Shown: in pieces, positions 16,580 to 63,978 of the stretch
How positions within the stretch are numbered: position 1 is the stretch's first letter
Layout: the number at the start of each line of letters is the position of its first letter
DNA from: Asterias rubens
Taxonomy: Eukaryota
Reading direction: 5' to 3'
Assembly: GCF_902459465.1 (NCBI RefSeq)
Contig: NC_047066.1
Location: 1,798,001 to 1,862,000 of the forward strand
DNA length: 64,000 nucleotides
Program-made: the position numbers and the translations under genes
Notes under the pieces: generated by a model
What the model was told of the DNA's origin: nothing
The model's database searches: none
The model's input: only the letters and a program-made list of their open reading frames with translations

Positions 16580-19500
16580 ATGAAGATTACTGTGACATTG
16601 TGTTTGCTATTGTTGGCTCTGTCATCTTTTGTTCGATCAGAAGGGGGTAAGTCAAGTACCGTTTAGTGTTTGCAATTGTTATAATGATTAGTTTGCCAAA
16701 TATGTCCAGGATGCATGATGTTTGCAACTTCAATACTTTTGCTTGGGAAGCCTTGCATTAAAATAAATATCACTTTATAATCGGTAAATGTAGGTGCTGT
16801 TTAGTGTTTGCAAGAAAACTGTTTTGTCCCATTGTTATCCCTACTTAACTGAGGAGTCAGTGTATCCCTGGTGGTCACAGGTGTAACCAGACATTTCATT
16901 TCTTCTGTTACTTTTTGTTTGTTTTTGTGGGGGGGGGGGGGCGGGGACGAGAGGGAGTTGAATTGCGATAAATGTCTGTATCAGACTGCCACTTTTTCTT
17001 TAATTGTTACCAGAAGCAGTATCTCATTTACCTTGAGTCAATAAGATTGTTTTGTTTATTATCAATGAAAAATTGGCAGTCTGATTAGTAGACATTGTAA
17101 CATTATTTATTGGGGTGTTTTCTTTAGTTAGCCAGCAAAGTCTGTGTCCATCACCTATTCACTGTTTTGCTTTGAATTATGCAACCCGGCATGCTTTCTA
17201 TCACGTATCAGGGTTATAACTTTTTTTATACTAAAAACAAAAATTGTACGGAAATGCACACGTGTCCATTTTCCTTCATGAGGAAAGTCAAGCGGCAATG
17301 GCAGCACACATTGACACCATCATTTATTGAGAACACTATGTACACGGTGCAGATAAAGGTTCAGATTGTACAACCAGTTCTATTGTATGCAAAATAAGAA
17401 CACACTATATAATGTGGGCCTCTTTTGACCAAAGTTTGTACAGTCATACTGTATCTATTGTTACTTCATAATTTGTTTCCCAGCGACAGCATTCTGTCCG
17501 TAGTCAATATGCCCATTTGATCAGACACACAGTTTAAATGTGCGGCAGCATAAGGATCCCATGATGATTTAAAAGCGCTTCTGATTAAAGGTATCCTCAT
17601 TTCATTGTCCATGTCATCCTGGATTGGGGGAGGGGGGAGGGGTCCCCCAAAACGAAAAACAAAATTATCAGAAAAAAAAGATTACATTTATTTTGTCAAC
17701 TTAAAATAAGTAAATAAGTTTCCTTCAAAACTATCGCTGCGCGGGTGTTTTTTAGTATCAAGTAATAATTCGCAAGGAAAAATGACTGAATAAATTTTCA
17801 GTAATTTGGGGTCACTTGGGTGTGATCCCTAGCTACACGGCTGTTAAAGGTTTTTGGCTTCTTACTGGCAGCCCTAAACAAAGATATTGACAAAATAGTG
17901 AGACTGCCACCATGGGGCTATAGCTCCAGCCTATTAGTATTAATCTGGAGGTCATTGGTTACAAATCCTGCTTTGAAAATTTGTCCTTTTTCAACCCCAA
18001 TATTGTTTGTTATGTCCACCAAAGTTAATAAGCTTATTTTGTTAAAATTATACATTCATTAGAAGTAGATAATTCTCTTGAGACATCTTGCGGAGATGAT
18101 TCTGTCAACTGTGCCCTCACCAAGGCAACCAGATGGTTACTGACGCAACAGGAGGCAGACTGGAGCTGGAACGAGGGCACCAGTTCATCTTCTGTTGTCT
18201 TGGCGATGCAGCTGGCCAATGAGAACTGGTTCTTAGAGAAGGGACTGAAGGCCCAGCTCGGAGTGAAACAGCTAGAGATAGAGTTGCTTGCTGAGCTTGC
18301 CCGATCAGCCAGGTAGGTCCAATCAATAATTTAGTTGGCATAGTGGTATCTTTCCTCGCCTTCCAACTCTAGGACCCCGGTATGAATCTGCCCGGGGGCA
18401 CTACATGGATTGGGCTTTCAGTCCCTACCTGACTGCATGGGTTTGAATCTGCCAGGGGGCACTACGTGGATTGGGCTTTCAGTCCCTACCTGACTGCATG
18501 GGTTTGAATCTGCCAGGGGGCACTACGTGGATTGGGTTTTCAGTCCCTACCTGACTGCATGGGTTTGAATCTGCCAGGGGGCACTACGTGGATTGGGCTT
18601 TCAGTCCCTACCTGACTGCATGGGTTTGAATCTGCCCGGGGGCACTACGTGGATTGGGCTTTCAGTCCCTACCTGACTGCATGGGTTTGAATCTGCCAGG
18701 GGGCACTACGTGGATTGGGCTTTCAGTCCCTACCTGACTGCATGGGTTTGAATCTGCCAGGGGGCACTACGTGGATTGGGCTTTCAGTCCCTACCTGACT
18801 GCATGGGTTTGAATCTGCCAGGGGGCACTACGTGGATTGGGCTTTCAGTCCCTACCTGACTGCATGGGTTTGAATCTGCCAGGGGGCACTACGTGGATTG
18901 GGCTTTCAGTCCCTACCTGACTGCATGGGTTTGAATCTGCCAGGGGGCACTACGTGGATTGGGTTTTCAGTCCCTACCTGACTGCATGGGTTTGAATCTG
19001 CCAGGGGGCACTACGTGGATTGGGCTTTCAGTCCCTACCTGACTGCATGGGTTTGAATCTGCCAGGGGGCACTACGTGGATTGGGCTTTCAGTCCCTACC
19101 TGACTGCATGGGTTTGAATCTGCCAGGGGGCACTACGTGGATTGGGCTTTCAGTCCCTACCTGACTGCATGGGTTTTCCCTGGAATAATTCTCTGGGGTT
19201 TTCCTCCCAAAACTAAAACTGAAACTTAATTTTTGTCTTCTCTTCATGGGGCTCTTTGCTAGTATAGTGATTACGTTTGCTTTTTCGAGAGCTCTTGGCT
19301 TCACACCCGAATAAATAAATGTACATAATGACCCCTTGCATATTCAAAATAGTCCCCTTACTGAGGTCAATGAAGCGCTATTTTTGGCTGAGAGTCTTGC
19401 GCATCACGTACATGTGTGCATGTTTCTATTGGTCTAAACTCTCACGAGACTGTACCATTTGTCTGGAATCCTTTACCCTGGTGATGCTTGAGTTGAAGGA

Positions 19501-22500
19501 TTCAGAAGGCCTGGAATTAAACGAAGGCCACGGAGGCCAAAGTCAAACTGAACCACATCATAGGCCAGTGTTTTGAGTTATTAAAAACTGTGAATCTACT
19601 ATCCAAACCATTTTATTCAAATTTGCATTCAAACTACATTTATAAATGGATTATGTTGGTAATAATAACAGCATTTATAAAGCGAAATATTTCCCCCAAA
19701 ATTGCTCAAAGGCGCTGGTATTGTTCTTTTTTTAACACACACACTCATCCCTTTATTATTTTTCTATTTTTTCTGTTATTACAGACAGAGTGGTTGTGAC
19801 AATAACTCCGAACGCCGCCCACGTCTTGTTCAAATCCCCGTTGGTCGCCTCGCTCTCTACATCCTGGCATTGGAATCTACATGTCACGACACCACAGACT
19901 TCTACGGCAATGACCTTGTGGAGATCTTAGAGCGCAATATGAAGCATTTCCCTCGGAATGACTTCAATAACTACTTCCAATATTCTATGGGGGTGTTGGC
20001 GCTCTGTCAAAGTGGTACCCAAGCTGTGAAGTTGAAGCATATTCGTCAGCTTCTTGAGGGTAAAGAAGACGATGGGTGCTACATGTTTGATGGACAGGGT
20101 TAGTGCTCTTTATAAAAAATAATATGAAGAAAAATAGCTAGTTCTTACATAGCACAGTTTACAATAATGTCAATGCGCTTCACATTATTGGTCATTGGGC
20201 CAATAATCCTTTCATCTTTCTCAGCTCCCTGGGAGTATACAACCCTGAGCTGTTGTGACGCTCTGAAGGCTTTTTCATAAACAACTTTATATCAACCGGC
20301 TACCAGAGAAGCAATTATAATCAAGCATCTTGCTCAGGGACACAAGTGTAATTTTCAGGATTCGAACCCACAGTTAACCACAAGAACTTGAGTTTGATGC
20401 TCTAAACCACTCAACCCAGACACCCTACATCAACAGCAGCGCTCAATTTGATAACATTTGGTGTACTATGTAACCATTCTTTTGCTGAGCGTAATTAAGT
20501 AAGGAACCATCCACCAGAATGCAAAACTTGAAATTTTAGCTGTTTACCAAACTCTGCTTAACAACAATGTTGTGCTAAGCAATACAATGGTTGGTCTCAC
20601 TGTTACAATTCCAAATGACAAATCTGCAACCATCACAGTTGCAGAAAATTGAATATCATGACCATGATTATATTCAGGGAATATGATGTAACTCATGCAT
20701 GAAGAATTCTAATTTAATAAATCTTTTTCATTTGTTTGTTGTTGTTGTTCTTCTTGTTTACATTAGGTGCTGATGTTTCTTCTCTAAGTCTTATGGCTTT
20801 GTCGTGTGCAGAGAATAGTGTCCCAGAGAGTTACAGATCACACTTTGAGCGTCACTTCAATAAGACAATGGATTGTATATTAAGCAAGCAGAATGAAGAT
20901 GGGTCTGTTGGTAACCACATCAGCACAGCTCTTGCTAGTCAGGTAAGTCAAATCTTTTGTAGTTTGTTCATGGATTGACCCCTATTAAACCTTGCTATGG
21001 AAGAGATATTGTTGCTAGGAAATTTGCATGATGTTGCTGTTCATCAGTTAATCTTACTTTACTTGAATTATTTTAAAACCAGTTTTCTTGAAAAACAATT
21101 GGAATACATCACTTAAAGTTAATGTCATGGCTTCTTATTTTTGTGTGTGAAGTATAAACCAGATGCTGAGTGACCTACATAAATTGTGAATTATTGTAAC
21201 ATATTGAATGAGTATTTGAACGTGTCCGAATTTGCTGCTACAGCTGCGCTTATGACTAGATGTTTGCATCATCATGCATTGAAGTATAGGCCACAGTCTA
21301 GAAAGTTTTACATTAAAACTAAGCAAACCTAAAAAGGGCAAGAATTTTTGCCACAGGTTTAATGTTTGTGATAATTTTGGAAGTTTCATCGATGGTTGTG
21401 CTTTGTTTAATTTTATATTGCTTTTTAAAATTCTCTTAACTCTTGTTTACTTTTCAGGCTCTGCTCGCTGCCAATGTGGATCCAATAGTGTGGAAGAAAG
21501 AGCAAGCATTTCAGCACATCCTCAATTCTCAAGATGAAGACGGCCATTTTGGAAACCTTGGAGCCACTGTTCAGATTCTTCCCATTCTTGCTAACAGACA
21601 TCATGGAAGTGTCAAGGAGGTCAAAGCTGCTTGTCTTTTAAATGGTAAAAAAACAAAATCTAAGACAGCTAGCCAGTAGGGCTAAGGCCTTCTTACGATT
21701 TGGTTGTCAAAGTTTGAACTCATTTTGTAATTATTGAGACATCCCACCCGAGTGACATGACTGTAGATATTTTTTTCACAGGATTCGGGGGGGGGGGGGG
21801 GGGGAGTAGTACTGTGAGTATAAAGTGCTTACAGATCAGTGTAAGGGGGAAACAAATTATAGTAACAAATAATTAAACGAATACATTTTTTTGCAAAATT
21901 AACATCTGTTGAAACATCTTCATTTGTTAACAACGTCACGTCAATGTTGTAAATATTTTTTTTCTTTTTCTAACTTCTAACAACTTTTTTCCCGTTGCGC
22001 CATGAAATGCTGGATGGACCTGTGGAAACTGCCATGTAATAAAGCGTTTTCAAATCAACTTTAAAGACAGTGGACACTATTGGTAATTGTCAAAGACCAG
22101 TCTTCTCACTTGATGAATCTCAACATATGCATAAAATAACAAACCTGTGAAAATTTGAGCTCAAACGATCTTTGAATTTGCGAGATAATATTGAAAGAAA
22201 AAAACACCCTTGTCACACAAAGGTGTGTGCTTTCTGATGCTTGATTTCGAGACCTCAAATTCTAAACTTGAGGTCTCGAAATCAAATTCGTGGAAATTAC
22301 GCCTTTCTCGAAAACTACGTCACTTCAGAGGGAGCTGTTTCTCACAATGTTTTATACCATCAACCTCTCCCCCATTACTCGTTATCAAGAAAGGTTTTAT
22401 GATGATAATTACTTTGAGTAATTACCAATAGTGTCCACTGCCTTTAAGCCCTACAACTGAAAAGAAAAAACCTCTTTGCAAACTTTCAGATGCACAGCCT

Positions 22501-24377
22501 ACCGCTGCCCAACCAGCCAGTAACCAATCAGCAACAACAACAGAACTAGGTCCACCAATCACAATTCAAATCACTGTTGAGAATAGCGTCCATGATAATC
22601 AAGAGACAGTGACTATTCCAGTTACTGGCCCAGCTGGCTTAACCCTGTTCCAATTCCTGCAAAGAGCAATGGAGATATCTGGAGATCAATTCTGGTGAGT
22701 GAGAATTTATATCTGGACGTTTCTCAGTAGCTCTATGGGTCTGGCTTCCTAATGTGAGGAAAACATAATAATGATAATCAAGGAATGACGAGTCAACGAA
22801 TAGTCTAATTCTTTCCCAAATTAATGTGACTCAAAACCACTTAGGGTCACAATAATGAAAGCTAGTTTTTATAAAGTACTTGCTTTATCTCTGCAGTCGT
22901 CTCAAAGCGCTTTTTCATTATTTATTTCCCGACGGGTTTTTTAAGATTATGATTTATAAGACCTATTTATGTAACACCTGGTATTTGTTAACAAGATGCT
23001 AGGGTACATTCAGTTCAGCAGCCACTGCCAGAAATACCGGGGCAAACCCCTTCTCTTAGCGATAAGTGTAACTGGGTTCTTGTATGTTACACAACTCATG
23101 AGACCAACAACTTTACGTCTAATCCAAAGGATGAAGCAATAAAATAATAATAAGACTTGTAATGCGCACTTATCCACCCTGCTGGGTGTTCAAGGCGCAG
23201 TAAAACCGGAAAACAAACAAAACAAAGAAAAACAGACACAACCAAATTAGTCCTTAGAAACCTGTGACATAAGATAAGTTTTGAGAAGAGATATTTGAAT
23301 GTTGAATGCAATAATAGTTAAGTATCTTGCTTTAGTACACAAGTGTTAATACCAGGACTCTGCAACGTCAGGCCTTTAGTTGTTTGCATTTATACCATAG
23401 GTTCTTTGGTTGATGGGTAGTTTGGAACAGCTAATTCAATTTTCTATCAAAACATCTTGTTGAATGGAGGAGGTAAGCCTTACTGATGCTTAAAGGTGTC
23501 TCGTTTTTTGTTTTCATTTTGATAGGTTTGAATCTAAAATGACAGACTTTGGTAACTTCATGACCAGTATTAATGGAATTCCCAACGATGGCGTTAACCA
23601 TACCTATTGGACTATCCTCATTGGACCTGAACGGGAGTCCGCTTCTACAGGTGAGTTTAATCTTCACAATCTAAAAGCAAACACCAACACAAAAATGTTG
23701 TCAAATTAAAAATGCCACCACAATTAGAAAGCTTAGTTGGTAGAGACATAGAGCCTCAGATAAACCCAAAGTCAATTTTTCTCACTCCAAATTCTAGAAA
23801 AGAATTTTTGTTTAACTGTGGGTAATTCATTTTCTAAAAGGTCTATCAGTAGATTTGTCTTCCTTGTATTTTGGTTATAAGCTTAGGTTCAAGTTTTAAT
23901 TGACCCATCTTATCAAAGACATACAAGTACTATTTTCCTGTCTAAATTTATGAATTGATCATGTCATAAAATGCCTCTCAGATTTTGGTTTGCCCAATTG
24001 TATTACCATTGTTTTGTGTTACCAATAATTGTATTTACAAATTGTGTTAAATGTTTCATAAAAATCCCCCCAAAATCCTTGTATACATTTTTGTTGATAG
24101 ATATTAAGTTGACTAAAGTCTGGTTCATTCTTCCTGTCATTGCGAATGCATAGTGAATTTGACATCACAGCCGTGTTTGCTGCGAATGTTCCGCAAAAGA
24201 TGCGGAATTGCTTGTTGCCAATTTGTGGCCAAATTCGTTTGAACCGGGCTTTATTCTTCATTATGTTTTATGTGACTGAACTCATTTTTTGCTTTGCCTC
24301 TGTTTTGTCTGACAGGATCTGATGGCATAACACCAGAAGATGGCAAAGAGTATATTTTCTACTACAAAGCTTTCTAA
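16580..24377 (+). CDS. Transcobalamin/haptocorrin/intrinsic-factor family cobalamin-binding protein (461 aa, secreted, alpha + beta domains)
   Basis: Eight phase-consistent exons: 16580-16646 (signal peptide MKITVTLCLLLLALSSFVRS), 18063-18312, 19785-20098, 20767-20942, 21458-21644, 22490-22694, 23526-23650, 24316-24377(TAA). Motifs GRLALYILALESTC, NNYFQYSMGVLALC, DGSVGNHISTALASQ, DGHFGNLGATVQILP and the beta domain FMTSINGI..TYWTIL..GSDGITPEDG match family signatures. AATAAA at 24762. Confidence 0.88.
18335..19328 (+). mobile_element. tRNA-derived SINE hosting the 61-bp array
   Basis: A-box-like TGGCATAGTGG and B-box-like GGTATGAATC precede the array. The body and tail (GGGTTTTCCCTGG...AAACTGAAACTT...GAATAAATAAATGTA) also occur without amplification at ~59825-60045 and ~63415-63610. 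Confidence 0.7.
18384..19176 (+). repeat. Minisatellite, 13 x 61 bp, in intron 2 of the transcobalamin-like gene
   Basis: Unit GAATCTGCCAGGGGGCACTACGTGGATTGGGCTTTCAGTCCCTACCTGACTGCATGGGTTT starts every 61 bp from 18384 to 19116, with only single-base variants in copies 1, 3, 5 and 10. Confidence 0.98.
20165..20425 (-). mobile_element. tRNA-derived SINE with Deu-like core
   Basis: Reverse strand: A-box-like GGTTGAGTGGTTTAGAGC, GGGTTCGAATCC, ACACTTGTGTCCCTGAGCAAG, TGTATACTCCCAGGGAGCTGAG, tail GTGAAGCGCATTGA. Confidence 0.6.
22061..22447. mobile_element. Kolobok-type MITE, same family
   Basis: TTAA at both ends, 24-bp TIR, perfect 17-bp central stem (22241-22257/22269-22285). Confidence 0.88.
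23000..23200. mobile_element. SINE fragments: Nin-like core (23000-23140) and a reverse SINE/LINE 3' tail (23145-23200; also 6950-7015)
   Basis: CCCCTTCTCTTAGCGATAAGTG.ACTGGGTTCTT...GACCAAC.ACTTTACGTC..ATCC.AAGGA.GAAGCAA; shared tail TAATAAGACTTGTAATGC.CAC.TATCCAC.CTGCT.GGTGTT.AAGGCGCAG. Confidence 0.5.
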
Positions 24378-37386: not shown

Positions 37387-37596
37387 TAGTCTAGGTTCCT
37401 AGACCATTGGTGTTGCGTGGTCACACACTGTAATGAACGAACGCTAGCGGGCGCTCTGTTTCTATGATTTAGGATTAGAGAAACAGAGCGCCCGCTAGCG
37501 TTCGTTCATTACAAGCGTGTACAGTTTTTGCCGTGCATAATCGGAACGTTCGTTGTGTGTGACCACGCAACACCAATGGTCTAGGAACCTAGACTA
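37387..37596. mobile_element. 210-bp foldback MITE with 9-bp TSD (GGTTTCTAG)
   Basis: Perfect 42-bp TIR TAGTCTAGGTTCCTAGACCATTGGTGTTGCGTGGTCACACAC and a perfect internal 35-bp stem. TSD at 37378-37386 and 37597-37605; empty paralogous site at 42838-42846. Confidence 0.93.
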
Positions 37597-58309: not shown

Positions 58310-61300
58310 ATGGGTTGCATGTATTCAAAGAACAACCTGCCAAAAGTCATAGGTAAGTTTAAGTTAATATTTTGATTTGTTTTCACTCACTGACTGACTC
58401 AGTCAACTTTGGTTTGACAATGTTTACGAATTGAAATGAATGTTGTTGATGTTTTCCTCTTCTTCTTGTTTTGCTATTAACTATTGAACTAGCAAAGCAA
58501 AAAGAAAGGGTTGGGGGTCAAGTTAGTGAGGCTACACAACAATTGCTTTCTTGCCTGTTGCAGCAAAAAGATCTAATTCTAACGCTTTTAAACAACCAAG
58601 CTAGCCGAAGGCCCAACAATTTAGTTTAAATTGGTAATAATTAATAGGCCTAGGCCTATGTTAAGTTGTTTGTGTAACCTCGACTGCATATAATGGGCTT
58701 TTTTGACTTTTGTGAGGCCCTTTTCTGTGGACTGTGGGAAATTGATTTAATATCTCAATCAAGCAATAAACATAAACCACCGAGGAAATGATTAATTACA
58801 TGTAAATGGAACATATTTTTTATTTCTTTAGATTCTGACACAGGACCTAGGCGAAATCCAAAATATTCAAAAAAAACTTTGAAATCCCAAAATGCGGTAA
58901 GTTGGTCGTTAAAATAAAATACTACATTTTATATGCCTTACTGTCACAGTCACTCAGTCTAAAATAACTTTGTCATTCTAGGTATTCCTTATTTCTTTTA
59001 TAACTTTTTTATCACAGTCCCTTTTTCCTCTGGTAAAACTATATTTCATCAAGCATTATTTTTTTATTTCTTAGCAAATTGAATTTAACTCCCTTAAAAA
59101 ATGTCAGTTTCATGGCTGATAATATTGTTTTAGGTCATGTAGGTTGTCAATGTAAACGATTTTTTTCTTCTGAGAGATGAACTTCCTTTCCGGTAAAAAA
59201 AGTAACCTACTTTCTGAAAATATTGCTAATACTTTTTAATTTTTAATAGTAATAATAACTTGTTTCCAGGGAGTGATTTTGTAAGGCACCACTTTTTAAG
59301 TTTGATGTAATTATGTCTTAAGATCGGGCCGTAATGTTTGCTATTTTTTAGGCCAAGACCAAGATGAACAAGGCCCTGGCTGAGGTAAAAGCCAAGGGAG
59401 ATGCCAAGTTAGCTGCCTTTGCTGAACTAGGTAAAACAAATTACATTTTCTCTGACCTTTTCATTGTTCATCACAATCACAGCATCTTCCTTTTCCATTG
59501 TTAGTGTTACCCCACCCTTCCCTGTTAAAGGAGTGGTATAACTTTGGTAGTTACTTGAAATTTAATGACCATAAAAACTTATTTGGTTAGAAGAAAGGAT
59601 ATATATCATGCATAAGAACAAAATGAAAAAAGGGTTTTAATTGGTATTAGAAATTGGTAGGCCTGTCATCTGTGTTAAATTTCAGGCAAATTAAACCATC
59701 TGCACCCTTACTTTTATGCTTCCCTATACAATAGCCATTGATGGTTGTTTTGAAATAGAGACTTGGTGTGATTTGGGGGAAGTTTAGACCATTTCTTGTG
59801 ATTGCTGTGTGACATTTTAGATAAGATTTGGTGGTCAGTCTTTTCTCGCCTTCCTCCTCTAGGAAATGGGGACAATACGTGGATTTGGTTTTCAGTCCCC
59901 ATCTGACTGTGTGAGTTTTCCCTGGAACACTTCCTCCCACATCTTAAACTGAAACTTCTTTCCTTGTTCTCATCATGGGTTCCTGGCTAGTAAAGTGTTT
60001 AAGTTTGTTTTTCTGATAGTCCTAGAATGAATGAAATGTAATGAAAAACTCCTGTCCTGTCATTACAGCAGGGATCCAGCTGCCAGCTGCTTCCATCAAG
60101 CAAAGCGTTAACGAGCAAGCCCCACTCCCTGAGCAAGCCACCCCTATGGAGACCCTGAAGGTGAGAGATCCATCATTGTGACATTTCAAACCATTTCAAC
60201 CCATTCATGTACCATTTATTTTTATTCATATGGACACATTAGTTGTTTATTAAGGGTTCTTGTTTTTATTTTATTTTCTTATTTATTTGCAAATGGCGAC
60301 ACCGTTCTGAAAACTGTGTGGCCGTGACAATGATATTTTTTATATTTTTTAGATTTACAACTATTTTTTTGAAGGGATGTAAGCCGGTCTCCAGTGACCA
60401 GTCAGCTCATGAAAGAGCTAATAACAAATTTATACTATACTTATCCTTATGGAAAAAGTAAATGCTATACTTCTCATTGATCCGATTTATGTACAAAGTT
60501 CATACAAAAATTAATCAGTGCCGGAGGACTTCAAGACTGGTCTCAGATTCGCCCTCTTTAGGGGCGGACTCAGACTTGATTGAGCTCCCCTCGGACAATA
60601 GGGACTCTGACTTCGAAAACATGGACTTGACTACAGCCCAGATATTAATCTAGTTTTACGTACATCTTTCCCACATATGGTTTGTCTTGAAGGCATCAAT
60701 GAAGAACGATAAGGTGTCTTTAAGTGGAATGGATGACACTGAAGCTATTCCTGTCTCCATCTCAACTGATGTCATCGCTATGATGACTATCAATGATACA
60801 CTGAGCAAGACGGAGGAACTCAAGAAGCAGACTGAGGTAAGAAGCAAAAAACTTGATAAAGAAGTTTTATGTGATATCTGAAACTAAAAAAGTTGAGTAA
60901 ATTTAGAATTGACTTTTGCATACTGTCAATGAAACAAAACTTCATCCAAATAATAACCAAAACGTATAATTTTTACCCTTACACCGATGTGTATTAAAAG
61001 CACTGTATACTCATTACGGACAAGTTTCCGTATGGCGCCACCACTTTTTCATTCGATATGAAATAATGTAGTATCTAATTTACCTCAATGAGATATCCCT
61101 TTTTGTTAAATTTACCTCAATGAGATATCCCTTTTTGTTAAAATGAGTGAAAAAGTGGTGGCGCCATACGGAAAGTTATCCCTCATTACTTTCCAAGGTT
61201 CTCCATGAAACAATCCACAGGCAATTACTCTGGTGGGATTCGAACCCACGACCTATGCATTGCTAGAGCAGATTTCTTAACACTTGACCACCAAGCTAGC

Positions 61301-63978
61301 CTGGTATCTAGAGGCAGCTCAAATTCTTAGTACTGCAGTGATTTAAAAGATTAATTTTTTGCATTGGGGATCTCTATCACCGACGACAATTCAAAGTTAT
61401 CTGATAACGTACTCACAACAAAACATCACAATCCTAAGATCAATTCAATTTCTGATGAAGTTTTGTATTGTTTTGGATATTGAATCTTTTATTAGTTGAT
61501 CCAGTTAGTCTAATGTTTTAAATTATCAGCAAACATTAAAACGACTGTGTACTCTAATTCAGTCTGCCCCAGCCTTTGAGCGTCCAACCAACTCAGCTCA
61601 ATCTACCAGCTCAAGACTAATTGTTGTCACTGAAGCAACTGTTGACAACACACAGGGGAAGAAACTACCCACTACTACTGTTCCTTCTAAAGTAGAGGTA
61701 AACATTCTTGTGACCTGTGCCCAATTTCATAAAGCAGTAAATTTCTTGGTCAACCAAGAAATGACTTGGGTAATCAATGGTACTCTGGCTGGTAGCCTGT
61801 TTTTGCTAAGCGAACAAAAATTGTGCTTTTGCTGTTTTGCTGTTTTTTCAGCAAGTAAACACTGTATTCGGTTGAAACTTTCACATGTGACGTTTAGTGT
61901 ATCTTTTTTTTTATAATTTTGACCAAAAATAAGCATGACGTTGGAAAAAAAGAAACCACTGACCCAACCTTCGAGACAAGTATGAAATAAAACAAGTATA
62001 AAAAGTAACATTAAAAATAATTCCTCTTTCTCCAGGAACTAACTACTGACTCTGACTCCATGATGAGTGATGACAATGACGCAGAAATGATAACCAAGGA
62101 TGAAAAGGTGAATGAAGAACTAGCACAGGTAAAAAAGGCAACATGTTCAGATTCTGAAAATGCAGTTAATTTGAGCAGAATTTCTACAAGACCTGCAGGG
62201 CCCAATTTCATGAAGTTGTTAATGCATGAAATTAAGCTCAGCAAATTTCTAATTGTTTAAGCAAGAAATAACTGGGTTACTGTAGTCACGTCAATGGTAA
62301 CTGTATGGTATTCTGGCTGGTCATCTATTGCTAAGAAAAACTTGCTCGTGCTTATTAGGCAAGTTTTACTTAGCAATATAGGCTTTTTGTGGTAAGAGTC
62401 CAGTAATTTTATAACTTTACCAACAATGCAAATTAGATTGGCCTGCAACTGCCGAGGCCTTAAATTATGGGAAAATGCCTGCAACTGCCTAGGCGGGGTA
62501 ATTACTAGTGAATAATAATTAATATCTATTACTTACAACTTTAACCAATGAGCAGGTTCTTCCCTGTGAGGGGCAAACACCACCAAGCCAAGTCCAAACC
62601 TGCTACATTGGCCTAAGGAAAATAGTAGCGAAGAAAACTGCCTTAATAATCGAGAACCTTCTCTGACCAGAGCTGACGATGAAGTGGACGAGCATTTGCT
62701 ATGCGCCCCTCGTTGTCGTTACACCTCAGCAGTTTTCAAAAGAAGAAGTGAACTAAAGCGTGCGCCTTTTGTGCACAAAGAAAGCTTTATTTATTCTTAA
62801 AGGAATTCACTCCAGGCTTATTGAAATTTGGCCCAGTTTGTTAAAAGGGTCCACCATCTAACAAACACTACCTACCCCAACTGAACCCAAAAATAATCAG
62901 TTAATAACAATTTTCAACATACATTTTTGAAAATATAAATTGGCCTCCTTATTTAGAAAAATAAGTGCAATAAATAATAAAATAGATAAATAAAATAAGT
63001 AAAATAAATAAATAATTAAAATTGTTAAATGAAGAACAGTGGTCTCAGTGTAAAGTATTTAAATTAATTTGATTAATGTATCAGATAATGCCAGCCAGTG
63101 AACGTCCTAGCAGCTCTGCGTCTGCCTGCTCCAGACTGATAGTTGTAGCTGAAGCTAAGACATCCATTGATAACACCATGGATGAAACCATACCCGCTCC
63201 ATCTACCTCCACCTCTCCCAAGACTGAGGAGAAGGTAAGATGGGAAAAATGGTTTTGCAAAATGCAACTTGCTACATTTTCAGATGAATTGTTTTGTTTA
63301 CAAAAGACTTAAGTACAAAATGTTTTGCTGAAACCAGCACCTGTCTTTGAAATTTACTAAAAACTCATGTTGTCAGATTACAAGGGACAATTATATAGAG
63401 CTACTTAAACTTACACCTCTAGGACCCTGGTTCAAATCACACCAGGGGCACTGTGTGGTTCGGGTTTCAGTCCCTACCTGACTGCGTGGGGTTTTCCCTT
63501 GGAAACATTGGGGTTTTTTTTCCACATCTAGAACTTAAACTTCCTTCCTTCTCTTTCTTGGGTTCTTGGCTAGTTCAATGATTAAGTTCAATTTTCTGGG
63601 AGTCATTAATTACCTTCACAACCAGAATTAGTTAACACAATAAAAATTAAGGCCAGTTATGATTCTGATAAATTAGTAACATGCAGACATACAAAATGAT
63701 AACAATAAATTCTTCCTTTTCATCTTCAATCATGATTTAGTGAGTATTTGTCTTTATTCCAGCCATTGAACCAGCTAGCGTCATCTGCGAGCAGTCTGGA
63801 TAAAGCGACTACTAATTTAGTAGATGCTGTCTTTACCAGCCTGGACAACGAGGAAACTGCACAAGAATCCATTGTGGATGTGCAGAATTCTGATGCTGTG
63901 ATCAACGATTGTAATACGGTGAGTGAAGTGAAAGAACAGTTAAACATTCCATCAAAGCACAACAGTTCACCTGACTAA
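58310..63978 (+). CDS. Uncharacterised MGC-initiated (predicted myristoylated/palmitoylated), low-complexity acidic S/T-rich protein
   Basis: Phase-consistent exons 58310-58352 (MGCMYSKNNLPKVI), 58832-58896, 59352-59430, 60069-60160, 60693-60836, 61563-61697, 62036-62128, 63085-63234, 63763-(63918 GTGAGT donor or 63978 TAA). All have canonical GT-AG boundaries and an open frame. The gene may continue beyond the window. Confidence 0.68.
59825..60045 (+). mobile_element. SINE copy (same family as 18335-19328), unamplified
   Basis: TCTCGCCTTCC..CTCTAGGA...TACGTGGATTTGGTTTTCAGTCCCCATCTGACTG...TTTTCCCTGGAA...AAACTGAAACTT. Confidence 0.7.
61018..61181. mobile_element. MITE with 8-bp TSD (CTCATTAC) and GG termini (Merlin/hAT-like)
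   Basis: TIR GGA(C/T)AA.TTTCCGTATGGCGCCACCACTTTTTCA; TSD at 61010-61017 and 61182-61189; internal 32-bp tandem duplication 61077-61140. Confidence 0.85.
63415..63610 (+). mobile_element. SINE copy (same family as 18335-19328), unamplified
   Basis: CTCTAGGACCCTGGTTCAAATC...CCAGGGGCACT..GTGG...TTTCAGTCCCTACCTGACTGCGTGGG. Confidence 0.7.

What the first reader, a model, noticed from the sequence alone, without database searches (positions are those of the whole stretch)
18384..19176. SINE-born 13 x 61-bp array that multiplies a B-box-like + CTCF-like (+ TACGTG) cassette: candidate insulator array
Seen: the array is an internal amplification of a tRNA-SINE; single-unit relatives lie at ~59825 and ~63415. 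The unit junction (GCATGGGTTT|GAATCT) recreates a B-box-like GGTTTGAATCT in every copy. Overlapping it is AATCTGCCAGGGGGCACTA, which matches the CTCF core (consensus TGGCCACCAGGGGGCGCTA) over the 3' 13 positions, with one mismatch at a normally invariant C. TACGTG (HIF-type core) follows in 12 of 13 copies. Known: TFIIIC-bound B-boxes and tandem CTCF sites act as boundary elements, and echinoderms have CTCF. Inference: a very young (near-identical), probably length-polymorphic array may create a new chromatin boundary or enhancer cluster inside this gene.
Basis: partly seen in the sequence, partly recalled or inferred. Interest (0 to 1): 0.7.

Follow-up and report, generated by a model that had tools for sequence, protein, structure and literature searches.

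The report
Minisatellite born inside an intronic SINE
A 61-base piece of an old mobile element (a SINE) sitting in a starfish gene intron was copied 13 times in a row; the array is real, but its "insulator" motifs are weak leftovers of the element's tRNA-like promoter, so it is most likely an ordinary neutral repeat.

Summary
There is a 13 x 61-bp array, 98-100% alike, at 18384-19176, inside one copy of a high-copy SINE with a tRNA-type Pol III promoter. The array fills 54% of a 1,472-nt intron of a cobalamin-binding-protein gene and starts 71 nt after the splice donor.

The junction word occurs nowhere else in the 417.6-Mb genome, so the array arose in place. The likely cause is a slip at a GGTT(T) microhomology between the decayed B-box and the SINE body, followed by unequal exchange.

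The SINE copy is 10-12% diverged from its family and the units differ by about 1%, so the amplification or homogenisation is recent.

The insulator reading is not supported:
- The B-box-like word lacks C56 and C62.
- Its CTG triplet gives no enrichment genome-wide, whereas CCA does.
- ACGTG is commonplace in the window.
- At least four other SINE copies carry independent arrays without these motifs.

The scan had already noted other SINE-born arrays on other DNA of this genome.

The parts
18083..18312 (+). Coding exon of the host gene (a cobalamin-binding, transcobalamin/intrinsic-factor-type protein). It ends at CAG|GTAGGT. The start coordinate is approximate.
   Evidence: An open frame continues in phase into the next exon: AG at 18311-18312 plus A at 19785. 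The neighbouring exons hit Pfam PF01122 Cobalamin_bind at 5.6e-16 and 1.4e-08. This exon alone has no Pfam hit and is single-copy in the genome.
18313..19784 (+). GT...AG intron of 1,472 nt that holds the SINE and its array.
   Evidence: Donor GTAGGT at 18313, acceptor TTATTACAG ending at 19784, reading phase conserved. The array is 53.9% of the intron.
18333..18383 (+). SINE head: perfect A-box TGGCATAGTGG (18336-18346). The decayed original B-box GGTATGAATCT (18379-18389) starts 32 nt after it.
   Evidence: Alignment with 29 dispersed copies whose majority reads TGGCGTAGTGG ... GGTTCGAATCC. The head is 9.8% diverged from the family majority. ARAGORN and the Rfam tRNA model do not call a tRNA.
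18384..19176 (+). The array itself: 13 x 61-bp units running from the 3' half of the B-box to the GGGTTT of the SINE body. Each unit holds the SINE core TTTCAGTCCCTACCTGACTG.
   Evidence: TRF, 38-mer search, unit map. The junction 21-mer is found 12 times, all at this locus, in the whole genome at 2 mismatches or fewer.
19177..19325 (+). SINE tail (body and 3' end). The end coordinate is approximate.
   Evidence: Aligns to family copies up to about query position 260 of 269. It is 11.9% diverged from the family majority.
19785..20098 (+). Next coding exon of the host gene.
   Evidence: Pfam PF01122 Cobalamin_bind, 5.6e-16, 58.8 bits; sequence read.
59839..60012 (+). Distant single-unit relative of the SINE (70% identity).
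   Evidence: blastn and alignment.
63410..63588 (+). Distant single-unit relative of the SINE (74% identity).
   Evidence: blastn and alignment.

Best explanation
This is a locus-specific minisatellite derived from a SINE. An old SINE copy with a tRNA-type Pol III promoter, inserted in sense orientation 20 nt into an intron of a cobalamin-binding-protein gene, later suffered a 61-bp internal tandem duplication. The breakpoints lie in two short look-alike words about 60 bp apart: the decayed B-box (GGTT[C>T]GAATC) and the body word GGGTTTTCCC. That points to replication slippage or microhomology-mediated repair (inferred). Unequal exchange or further slippage then raised the copy number to 13 and spread one variant, CCAGGGGG (inferred).

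The B-box-like word at every junction is an automatic by-product of where the breakpoints fell. The CTCF-like word is the remnant of the SINE's T-arm and acceptor region plus one C>A change. ACGTG is an ancestral CpG of the SINE that has not yet decayed.

The array most likely has no function. Its main effect is to double the length of the intron.
For: **Array and SINE frame (shown).**

**Arose in place (shown).** The junction word CTGCATGGGTTTGAATCTGCC occurs 12 times in 417.6 Mb, all here.

**Amplified long after insertion (shown).** All 7 differences of the unit from the family majority are shared by the units. The copy is 9.8-11.9% diverged from the family, while the units differ by 0.8-1.2%.

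**Microhomology is plausible.** About a quarter of family copies read GGTTTGAATC through CpG decay, which would give a 5-nt GGTTT overlap with GGGTTTTCCC.

**Recurrent and unselective process (shown).** Other SINE copies carry independent arrays with other boundaries and periods:
- C2: 59 bp x 34, with nearly the same boundaries but the word TCACTGCGGCGAGGGACTA in place of the CTCF-like one.
- C20: 22 bp x 13.4, core only.
- C6: 63 bp x 4.
- C10: 173 bp x 2.7.

**Weak motifs (shown).**

**Precedent.** SINE-derived tandem arrays flanked by SINE termini are described in squamates (PMC10702118).
Against: - Nothing here measures chromatin, transcription or splicing, so a function cannot be excluded.
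- The CCAGGGGG variant, which raises the CTCF score from 5.0 to 10.5 bits, is the one that spread to 11 of 13 units. This is expected under drift in an array but is also compatible with selection.
- The first unit now reads GGTAT, so the 5-nt microhomology needs one later T>A change.
- My search for other arrays was keyed on the SINE core, so it cannot show that the core itself drives amplification.
- The unit shows no unusual DNA secondary structure that would explain slippage (z = 0.41).
Confidence: 0.8

Rival explanations
1. One reading: the array is a cluster of 11-13 CTCF and/or TFIIIC sites (plus HIF-type ACGTG) that acts as a new chromatin boundary or enhancer cluster inside the gene.
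For: - The unit passes a lenient motif threshold (10.5 bits, empirical p about 5.5e-5 per position), and 11 copies in 0.8 kb could bind cooperatively.
- The vertebrate-type CTCF core is strongly over-represented in this genome (560 against 15 for the reversed control).
- CTCF motifs are enriched at echinoderm domain boundaries and in constitutive open chromatin (PMC13317027).
- Sea urchin CTCF keeps fingers 2-10, which include the core-binding fingers (bioRxiv 10.1101/2023.05.26.542381).
- SINE-borne CTCF sites are known in mouse (Kaaij 2019, cited in PMC13317027).
Against: - There are two mismatches in the 5' triplet, including the near-invariant C (-6.6 bits).
- The CTG triplet is at background in front of the core genome-wide, while CCA is about 4-fold preferred.
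- The genome's favoured core is CTAGAGGGCGCT, not CCAGGGGGCACT.
- The B-box-like word lacks C56 and C62 (PMC11811891), and 117 equally good B-box-like words lie elsewhere in the window.
- ACGTG occurs 67 times elsewhere in the window.
- Sister arrays lack the motifs.
- Echinoderm CTCF shows no orientation or loop-anchor signal, and knockout embryos develop normally (PMC13317027; bioRxiv 10.1101/2023.05.26.542381).
Confidence: 0.04
2. A length-variable intronic repeat that modulates splicing of the host gene. The array starts 71 nt after the donor, in sense orientation. Each unit carries CCUACCUG, the exact complement of the donor CAG|GUAGG, plus a branch-point-like CUGAC and AG-ending words (UUUCAG, GCCAG).
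For: - CCTACCTG occurs 13 times in the array, and the donor reads CAGGTAGGTC.
- The minimum-energy fold of 18285-18520 pairs the donor with a downstream CCUACCUG.
- The array makes up 54% of the intron.
Against: - The fold is no more stable than shuffled sequence (z = 0.87; 163 of 200 shuffles fold at least as well).
- CCTACCTG is part of every copy of the SINE core, and CAG|GTAGG is a generic donor, so the match is a likely coincidence.
- The pyrimidine tracts before the AGs are poor (read from the sequence).
- No RNA data could be obtained.
Confidence: 0.06
3. Assembly artefact: the true locus has one unit or a very different number of units.
For: Tandem arrays are error-prone in assemblies.
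Against: - The array is only 0.8 kb, and its variant units sit in a definite order (units 1, 3, 5 and 10). A collapsed or inflated consensus would not produce that pattern.
- Unique flanks join it on both sides within one SINE frame.
- Several comparable arrays exist elsewhere in the same assembly.
Confidence: 0.05

Closest known systems
SINE-derived satellites (sSat) of squamate reptiles (Vassetzky, Kosushkin and Ryskov 2023, PMC10702118)
   Same: Head-to-tail repeats of an internal portion of a tRNA-related SINE, with terminal units that continue into the SINE's own ends. Independent origins at different loci and with different unit boundaries. Higher homogeneity within an array than between SINE copies.
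   Different: Here the array is a single locus (its junction is unique), short (13 units), intronic, and in an echinoderm. The squamate cases include multi-locus families of up to about 1000 units with a subtelomeric bias. The authors of that paper did not know whether such arrays exist outside squamates.
CTCF sites carried by mammalian B2-type tRNA-derived SINEs (my own knowledge; Kaaij et al. 2019 is cited in PMC13317027)
   Same: A tRNA-derived SINE sequence that resembles the CTCF core.
   Different: In B2 the strong motif is part of the SINE consensus, is spread by retrotransposition, and is ChIP-verified. Here the family consensus is a poor match (7.3 bits). Only 7 copies genome-wide carry a strong form. 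The array's word is weak (10.5 bits) and was multiplied by tandem duplication. No occupancy data exist.
tDNA and extra-TFIIIC (ETC) boundary elements (for example PMC3395662; B-box recognition in PMC11811891)
   Same: An 11-nt word descended from a real B-box, repeated without a matching A-box, as at ETC sites.
   Different: Positions C56 and C62, both read base-specifically by TFIIIC, are T in every unit. The family's intact GGTTCGAATCC is not what was multiplied.
Intronic minisatellites or VNTRs arising within retroelements, such as the VNTR of human SVA elements (my own knowledge)
   Same: A GC-rich unit of tens of base pairs amplified in place inside a non-autonomous retroelement. The array is 56% GC against 37% for the window. 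Length variability is expected.
   Different: The SVA VNTR is carried along by retrotransposition. This array is not mobilised, since its junction occurs at one locus only.

Membership tests
SINE-derived tandem array (sSat-type) | Head-to-tail units that are a portion of a known dispersed SINE | tested here: met
   TRF gives 61 bp x 13.1. The unit aligns to the B-box-to-core segment of 29 dispersed copies.
SINE-derived tandem array (sSat-type) | Array bounded by terminal units that continue into the SINE head and/or tail | tested here: met
   Head 18333-18383 and tail 19177 to about 19325 align to the family on both sides of the array.
SINE-derived tandem array (sSat-type) | Satellite behaviour: the same unit present at many loci | tested here: not met
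   The junction 21-mer is found only at this locus (12 of 12 hits, 2 mismatches or fewer). It is a single-locus minisatellite, not a satellite family.
tRNA-derived SINE (type 2 Pol III promoter) | A-box TRGCNNAGTGG and B-box GGTTCGANNCC at 30-60 nt spacing near the 5' end | tested here: met
   The family majority reads TGGCGTAGTGG, then 32 nt, then GGTTCGAATCC. This copy has a perfect A-box at 18336-18346 and a decayed B-box at 18379-18389.
tRNA-derived SINE (type 2 Pol III promoter) | Recognisable tRNA cloverleaf in the head | tested here: not met
   ARAGORN finds no tRNA in the window. The Rfam tRNA model gives no hit on this copy or on six better-kept copies at E of 1 or less. The tRNA origin therefore rests on the promoter boxes only.
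tRNA-derived SINE (type 2 Pol III promoter) | High-copy dispersed family with divergent copies | tested here: met
   2,463 first-look candidates. The core 20-mer occurs exactly 262 times against 0 for the control. Copies are 78-87% identical to this one.
Deu/Nin-type conserved SINE core domain | Sequence similarity of the body to the published Deu or Nin domain (for example SINE2-3_SP) | not tested
   No reference sequence was available in the tools. PMC5804259 lists CORE, Nin, Deu, Inv and Meta domains in echinoderm SINEs. The resemblance to fish Deu-type SINEs is from my memory only.
CTCF binding site / CTCF insulator | Match to the 15-bp core CCASYAGRKGGCRSY | tested here: not met
   13 of 15 positions match, with mismatches at C2 (T) and A3 (G). 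In this genome CTG before the core is at background and CCA is preferred.
CTCF binding site / CTCF insulator | CTCF occupancy and enhancer-blocking or boundary activity | not testable with these tools
TFIIIC-bound B-box / ETC boundary | B-box with the base-specifically read positions G53, T55, C56, G57, C61 and C62 | tested here: not met
   The unit reads GGTTTGAATCT, with T at position 56 and T at 62. PMC11811891 lists these as contacted bases and quotes a 370-fold loss for C56G in yeast. 117 words at 2 mismatches or fewer lie elsewhere in the window.
TFIIIC-bound B-box / ETC boundary | TFIIIC occupancy | not testable with these tools
   No ChIP or CUT&RUN data are available.
HIF response element | RCGTG core in a functional context | tested here: inconclusive
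   ACGTG is present in 12 of 13 units, but the 5-mer occurs 67 times elsewhere in the window on both strands. It is the ancestral CpG of the SINE, with family copies reading TAYRTGG. Presence of the core alone says nothing.

The most novel reading that the evidence does not exclude
The tandem multiplication of a weak CTCF-like word (made stronger by the C>A change that spread to 11 of 13 units) and a degenerate B-box gives enough avidity for architectural proteins to bind. A young, length-variable chromatin boundary or open-chromatin block would then sit inside a starfish cobalamin-carrier gene. That would be a route to new CTCF clusters by tandem duplication rather than by retrotransposition.
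Probability: 0.04. Interest if true: 0.55.

Novelty: new member of a known kind. Interest (0 to 1): 0.15.

Why it matters
As it stands it matters little. It is one more example of how SINEs seed minisatellites, now in an echinoderm and with a clear in-place origin and breakpoints.

Its modest value is twofold. First, together with the sister arrays on other chromosomes, it shows that SINE-derived arrays are not confined to squamates. Second, it is a caution that motif cassettes in such arrays are inherited promoter debris, multiplied automatically.

The side observation may be worth more than the array. The canonical CTCF core is about 37-fold over-represented in this starfish genome, and part of that excess sits in interspersed repeat families.

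Tried and rejected
- **tRNA detection.** ARAGORN and Rfam find no tRNA in the SINE heads.
- **Hairpin-driven slippage.** Two units folded as DNA give z = 0.41, so there is no special structure.
- **Donor masking by the array.** The pairing appears in the minimum-energy RNA fold, but z = 0.87.
- **Empty-site comparison with a paralogue.** The upstream exon is single-copy in the genome.
- **Long degenerate pattern for arrays.** A shorter, exact-core pattern was used instead, which biases the array census towards young arrays that contain the core.
- **SINE family as a genome-wide carrier of strong CTCF sites.** Rejected: only 7 copies have the strong form.
- **The C22 hits of CCAGGGGGCACT at 66-bp spacing.** These turned out to be an unrelated 22-bp minisatellite.
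- **Spliced gene model.** Exons were searched one by one by reference. The joined protein was not built.
- **N stretches.** There are none in the window.
Full report
**Observation**

The array is real. TRF reports one array at 18379-19176 with period 61, 13.1 copies, 98% matches and score 1554. A 38-mer from the unit is found 13 times at 1 mismatch or fewer, against none in 100 shuffles.

Phased from 18384, the 13 units differ at only four columns:
- Units 1 and 5 read CCCGGGGG where the other 11 read CCAGGGGG.
- Unit 1 reads TACATG where the other 12 read TACGTG.
- Units 3 and 10 read GGGTTTT where the rest read GGGCTTT.

Mean pairwise difference is 1.2%, or 0.8% without unit 1. The window has no N.

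**What the array sits in**

The array is framed by the head and tail of one SINE copy. The head is 18333-18383 and the tail runs from 19177 to about 19325.

A search of the window's own genome (417.6 Mb in 150 contigs; the window is C5:1798001-1862000) with the last unit plus tail gave 2,463 first-look candidates. Scored copies were 80-88% identical. An alignment of 29 copies shows the family's 5' end:
- a perfect A-box, TGGCGTAGTGG;
- 32 nt later a perfect B-box, GGTTCGAATCC;
- then CACCGGGGGCACTAYGTGGATTGGGTTTTCAGTCCCTACCTGACTGCGTGGGTTTTCCCTGG.

The core 20-mer TTTCAGTCCCTACCTGACTG occurs exactly 262 times in the genome, against 0 for the reversed control.

ARAGORN and the Rfam tRNA model do not recognise a tRNA in these heads. 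"tRNA-derived" therefore rests on the Pol III boxes alone.

I did not verify that.

**Host gene**

The upstream exon ends at 18312 (CAG|GTAGGT). The next exon starts at 19785 after TTATTACAG, and the reading phase carries over.

The downstream exons hit Pfam PF01122, eukaryotic cobalamin-binding protein, at 5.6e-16 and 1.4e-08. I searched exons one at a time and did not build the joined protein.

The intron is 1,472 nt. The SINE begins 20 nt into it, in sense orientation, and the array makes up 54% of it.

**Origin**

The junction word CTGCATGGGTTTGAATCTGCC occurs 12 times in the whole genome at 2 mismatches or fewer, all at this locus. The array was therefore made in place and was not carried in by a variant SINE.

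The copy is 9.8% (head), 11.7% (unit) and 11.9% (tail) diverged from the family majority. All seven unit-versus-family differences are shared by the units. So the copy was already old when the amplification, or the last homogenisation, took place.

The unit runs from the 3' half of the B-box to the GGGTTT of the body word GGGTTTTCCC. About a quarter of family copies read GGTTTGAATC through CpG decay. If this copy did too, the two breakpoints shared GGTTT. The junction then preserves that state, and the first copy later changed to GGTAT. This step is an inference.

The B-box-like word at every junction is thus a by-product of the breakpoint position. The unit has no notable DNA secondary structure (z = 0.41).

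**The process recurs**

Other SINE copies that share this core carry independent arrays:

| Place | Period x copies | Notes |
|---|---|---|
| C2:24422530-24424537 | 59 bp x 34 | Boundaries within 4 nt of ours; reads TCACTGCGGCGAGGGACTA where ours has the CTCF-like word |
| C20:11951315-11951609 | 22 bp x 13.4 | Core only |
| C6:551796-552045 | 63 bp x 4 | Core plus a different body |
| C10 | 173 bp x 2.7 | Head plus core |

My census was keyed on the core, so it cannot show that the core is the cause.

The scan's notebook lists further SINE-born arrays on other DNA of this genome (s1-150239, s1-150745, s1-150843, s1-180083). SINE-derived arrays of this anatomy are described in squamates (PMC10702118).

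**The motifs**

*B-box.* The unit reads GGTTTGAATCT, with T at tRNA position 56 and T at 62. The human TFIIIC-DNA structure paper lists C56 (both strands of that pair) and the partner of C62 among the base-specific contacts. It also quotes a 370-fold affinity loss for C56G in yeast (PMC11811891). Words within 2 mismatches of GGTTCGANNCC occur 117 times elsewhere in the window, 7 of them perfect.

Scores are:

| Sequence | Score (bits, maximum 31) |
|---|---|
| Major unit | 10.5, with -6.6 at the near-invariant C and -1.4 at the next A |
| Units 1 and 5 | 5.0 |
| Family consensus | 7.3 |
| One-base variant CCACCAGGGGGCACTA | 21.7 |

Seven sites elsewhere in the window score at least 10.5 (p about 5.5e-5 per position). 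Only 7 SINE copies genome-wide carry the strong variant.

*CTCF, by this genome's own word counts.*

| Pattern | Hits | Reversed control |
|---|---|---|
| CCASYAGRKGGCRSY (canonical 15-mer) | 560 | 15 |
| SYAGRKGGCRSY (bare 12-mer) | 10,848 | 1,189 |
| CTGSYAGRKGGCRSY (CTG version) | 161, of which 11 are the array | 14 |

CCA precedes 5.2% of cores, about four times the share expected from base composition (my estimate of about 1.2% per such triplet). CTG precedes 1.4%, which is background. So the array's 5' triplet adds nothing. The genome's favoured core is CTAGAGGGCGCT rather than CCAGGGGGCACT.

*ACGTG.* It occurs 67 times elsewhere in the window and is simply the SINE's ancestral CpG.

**Background on echinoderm CTCF**

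Sea urchin CTCF keeps fingers 2-10, and knockout embryos reach the pluteus stage normally (bioRxiv 10.1101/2023.05.26.542381). In Patiria and Strongylocentrotus, CTCF motifs are enriched at domain boundaries and in constitutive open chromatin. They show no orientation pattern and no enrichment at loop anchors (PMC13317027).

**Verdict**

The functional part is not supported by any sequence test, although occupancy remains untested.

The best explanation is a neutral minisatellite made in place inside the SINE (0.8). The rivals are:
- an insulator cluster (0.04);
- a splicing-modifying VNTR (0.06). Each unit carries CCUACCUG, the complement of the adjacent donor CAG|GUAGG, but the predicted pairing is no better than in shuffled sequence (z = 0.87);
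- an assembly artefact (0.05).

Copy number and polymorphism are therefore unverified.

Noticed in passing
G000:C2:24422530-24424537 (L031 731-2737): A 59-bp x 34 array (96% matches) sits inside another copy of the same SINE. Its boundaries lie within 4 nt of those of the window's array, but it has a different word (TCACTGCGGCGAGGGACTA) where the CTCF-like piece would be. It is an independent event at nearly the same breakpoints.
   Followed up: partly
G000:C20:11951315-11951609 (L044 1016-1310); G000:C6:551796-552045 (L043 997-1246); G000:C10 (L032 626-1090): Three further SINE-internal arrays contain the core TTTCAGTCCCTACCTGA: 22 bp x 13.4, 63 bp x 4 and 173 bp x 2.7. Each lies in a SINE with its own tRNA-like head.
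   Followed up: partly
Whole genome G000; sampled sites L046-L065: The canonical CTCF core CCASYAGRKGGCRSY occurs 560 times against 15 for the reversed control. The dominant word is CCACTAGAGGGCGCT. Of 20 sampled sites, about half fall into two interspersed repeat families with shared flanks (L047/L055/L062/L064 and L051/L054/L056/L057/L059/L060). A good part of the excess is therefore carried by repeats. This is a possible case of CTCF-like motifs spread by mobile elements in a starfish.
   Followed up: partly
G000:C6:5432157-5432174 (in L012) and six other places: Seven copies of the SINE family carry TC[N]CACCAGGGGGCACTA, a near-perfect CTCF core (21.7 bits) one base away from the family consensus.
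   Followed up: no
G000:C22 (L066 687-1350): An unrelated 22-bp x 30 minisatellite (AAAGGCAATGACCAGGGGGCAC) also multiplies CCAGGGGGCAC.
   Followed up: partly
window 18310-18317 and every unit of 18384-19176: The splice donor CAG|GTAGG is the exact complement of CCTACCTG, which is present once in each of the 13 units downstream in the same intron. The minimum-energy RNA fold pairs them, but the fold is not better than shuffled sequence.
   Followed up: partly
window 61225-61297 (-): An Rfam tRNA match scores 30 bits, just above the gathering score of 29. ARAGORN does not call it. It may be another SINE head or a decayed tRNA gene.
   Followed up: no
window 18083-23706 (+): The host gene encodes a eukaryotic cobalamin-binding protein (PF01122 on two exons, plus a weak DUF4430-type C-terminal hit at 23539-23706). 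The exon before the array is single-copy in the genome.
   Followed up: partly
window 37438-37456 (+) and 37486-37504 (-): The same 19-mer CGAACGCTAGCGGGCGCTC sits on both strands 48 bp apart (CTCF matrix score 12.8 bits each). It is a small inverted repeat that scores higher than the array's units.
   Followed up: no
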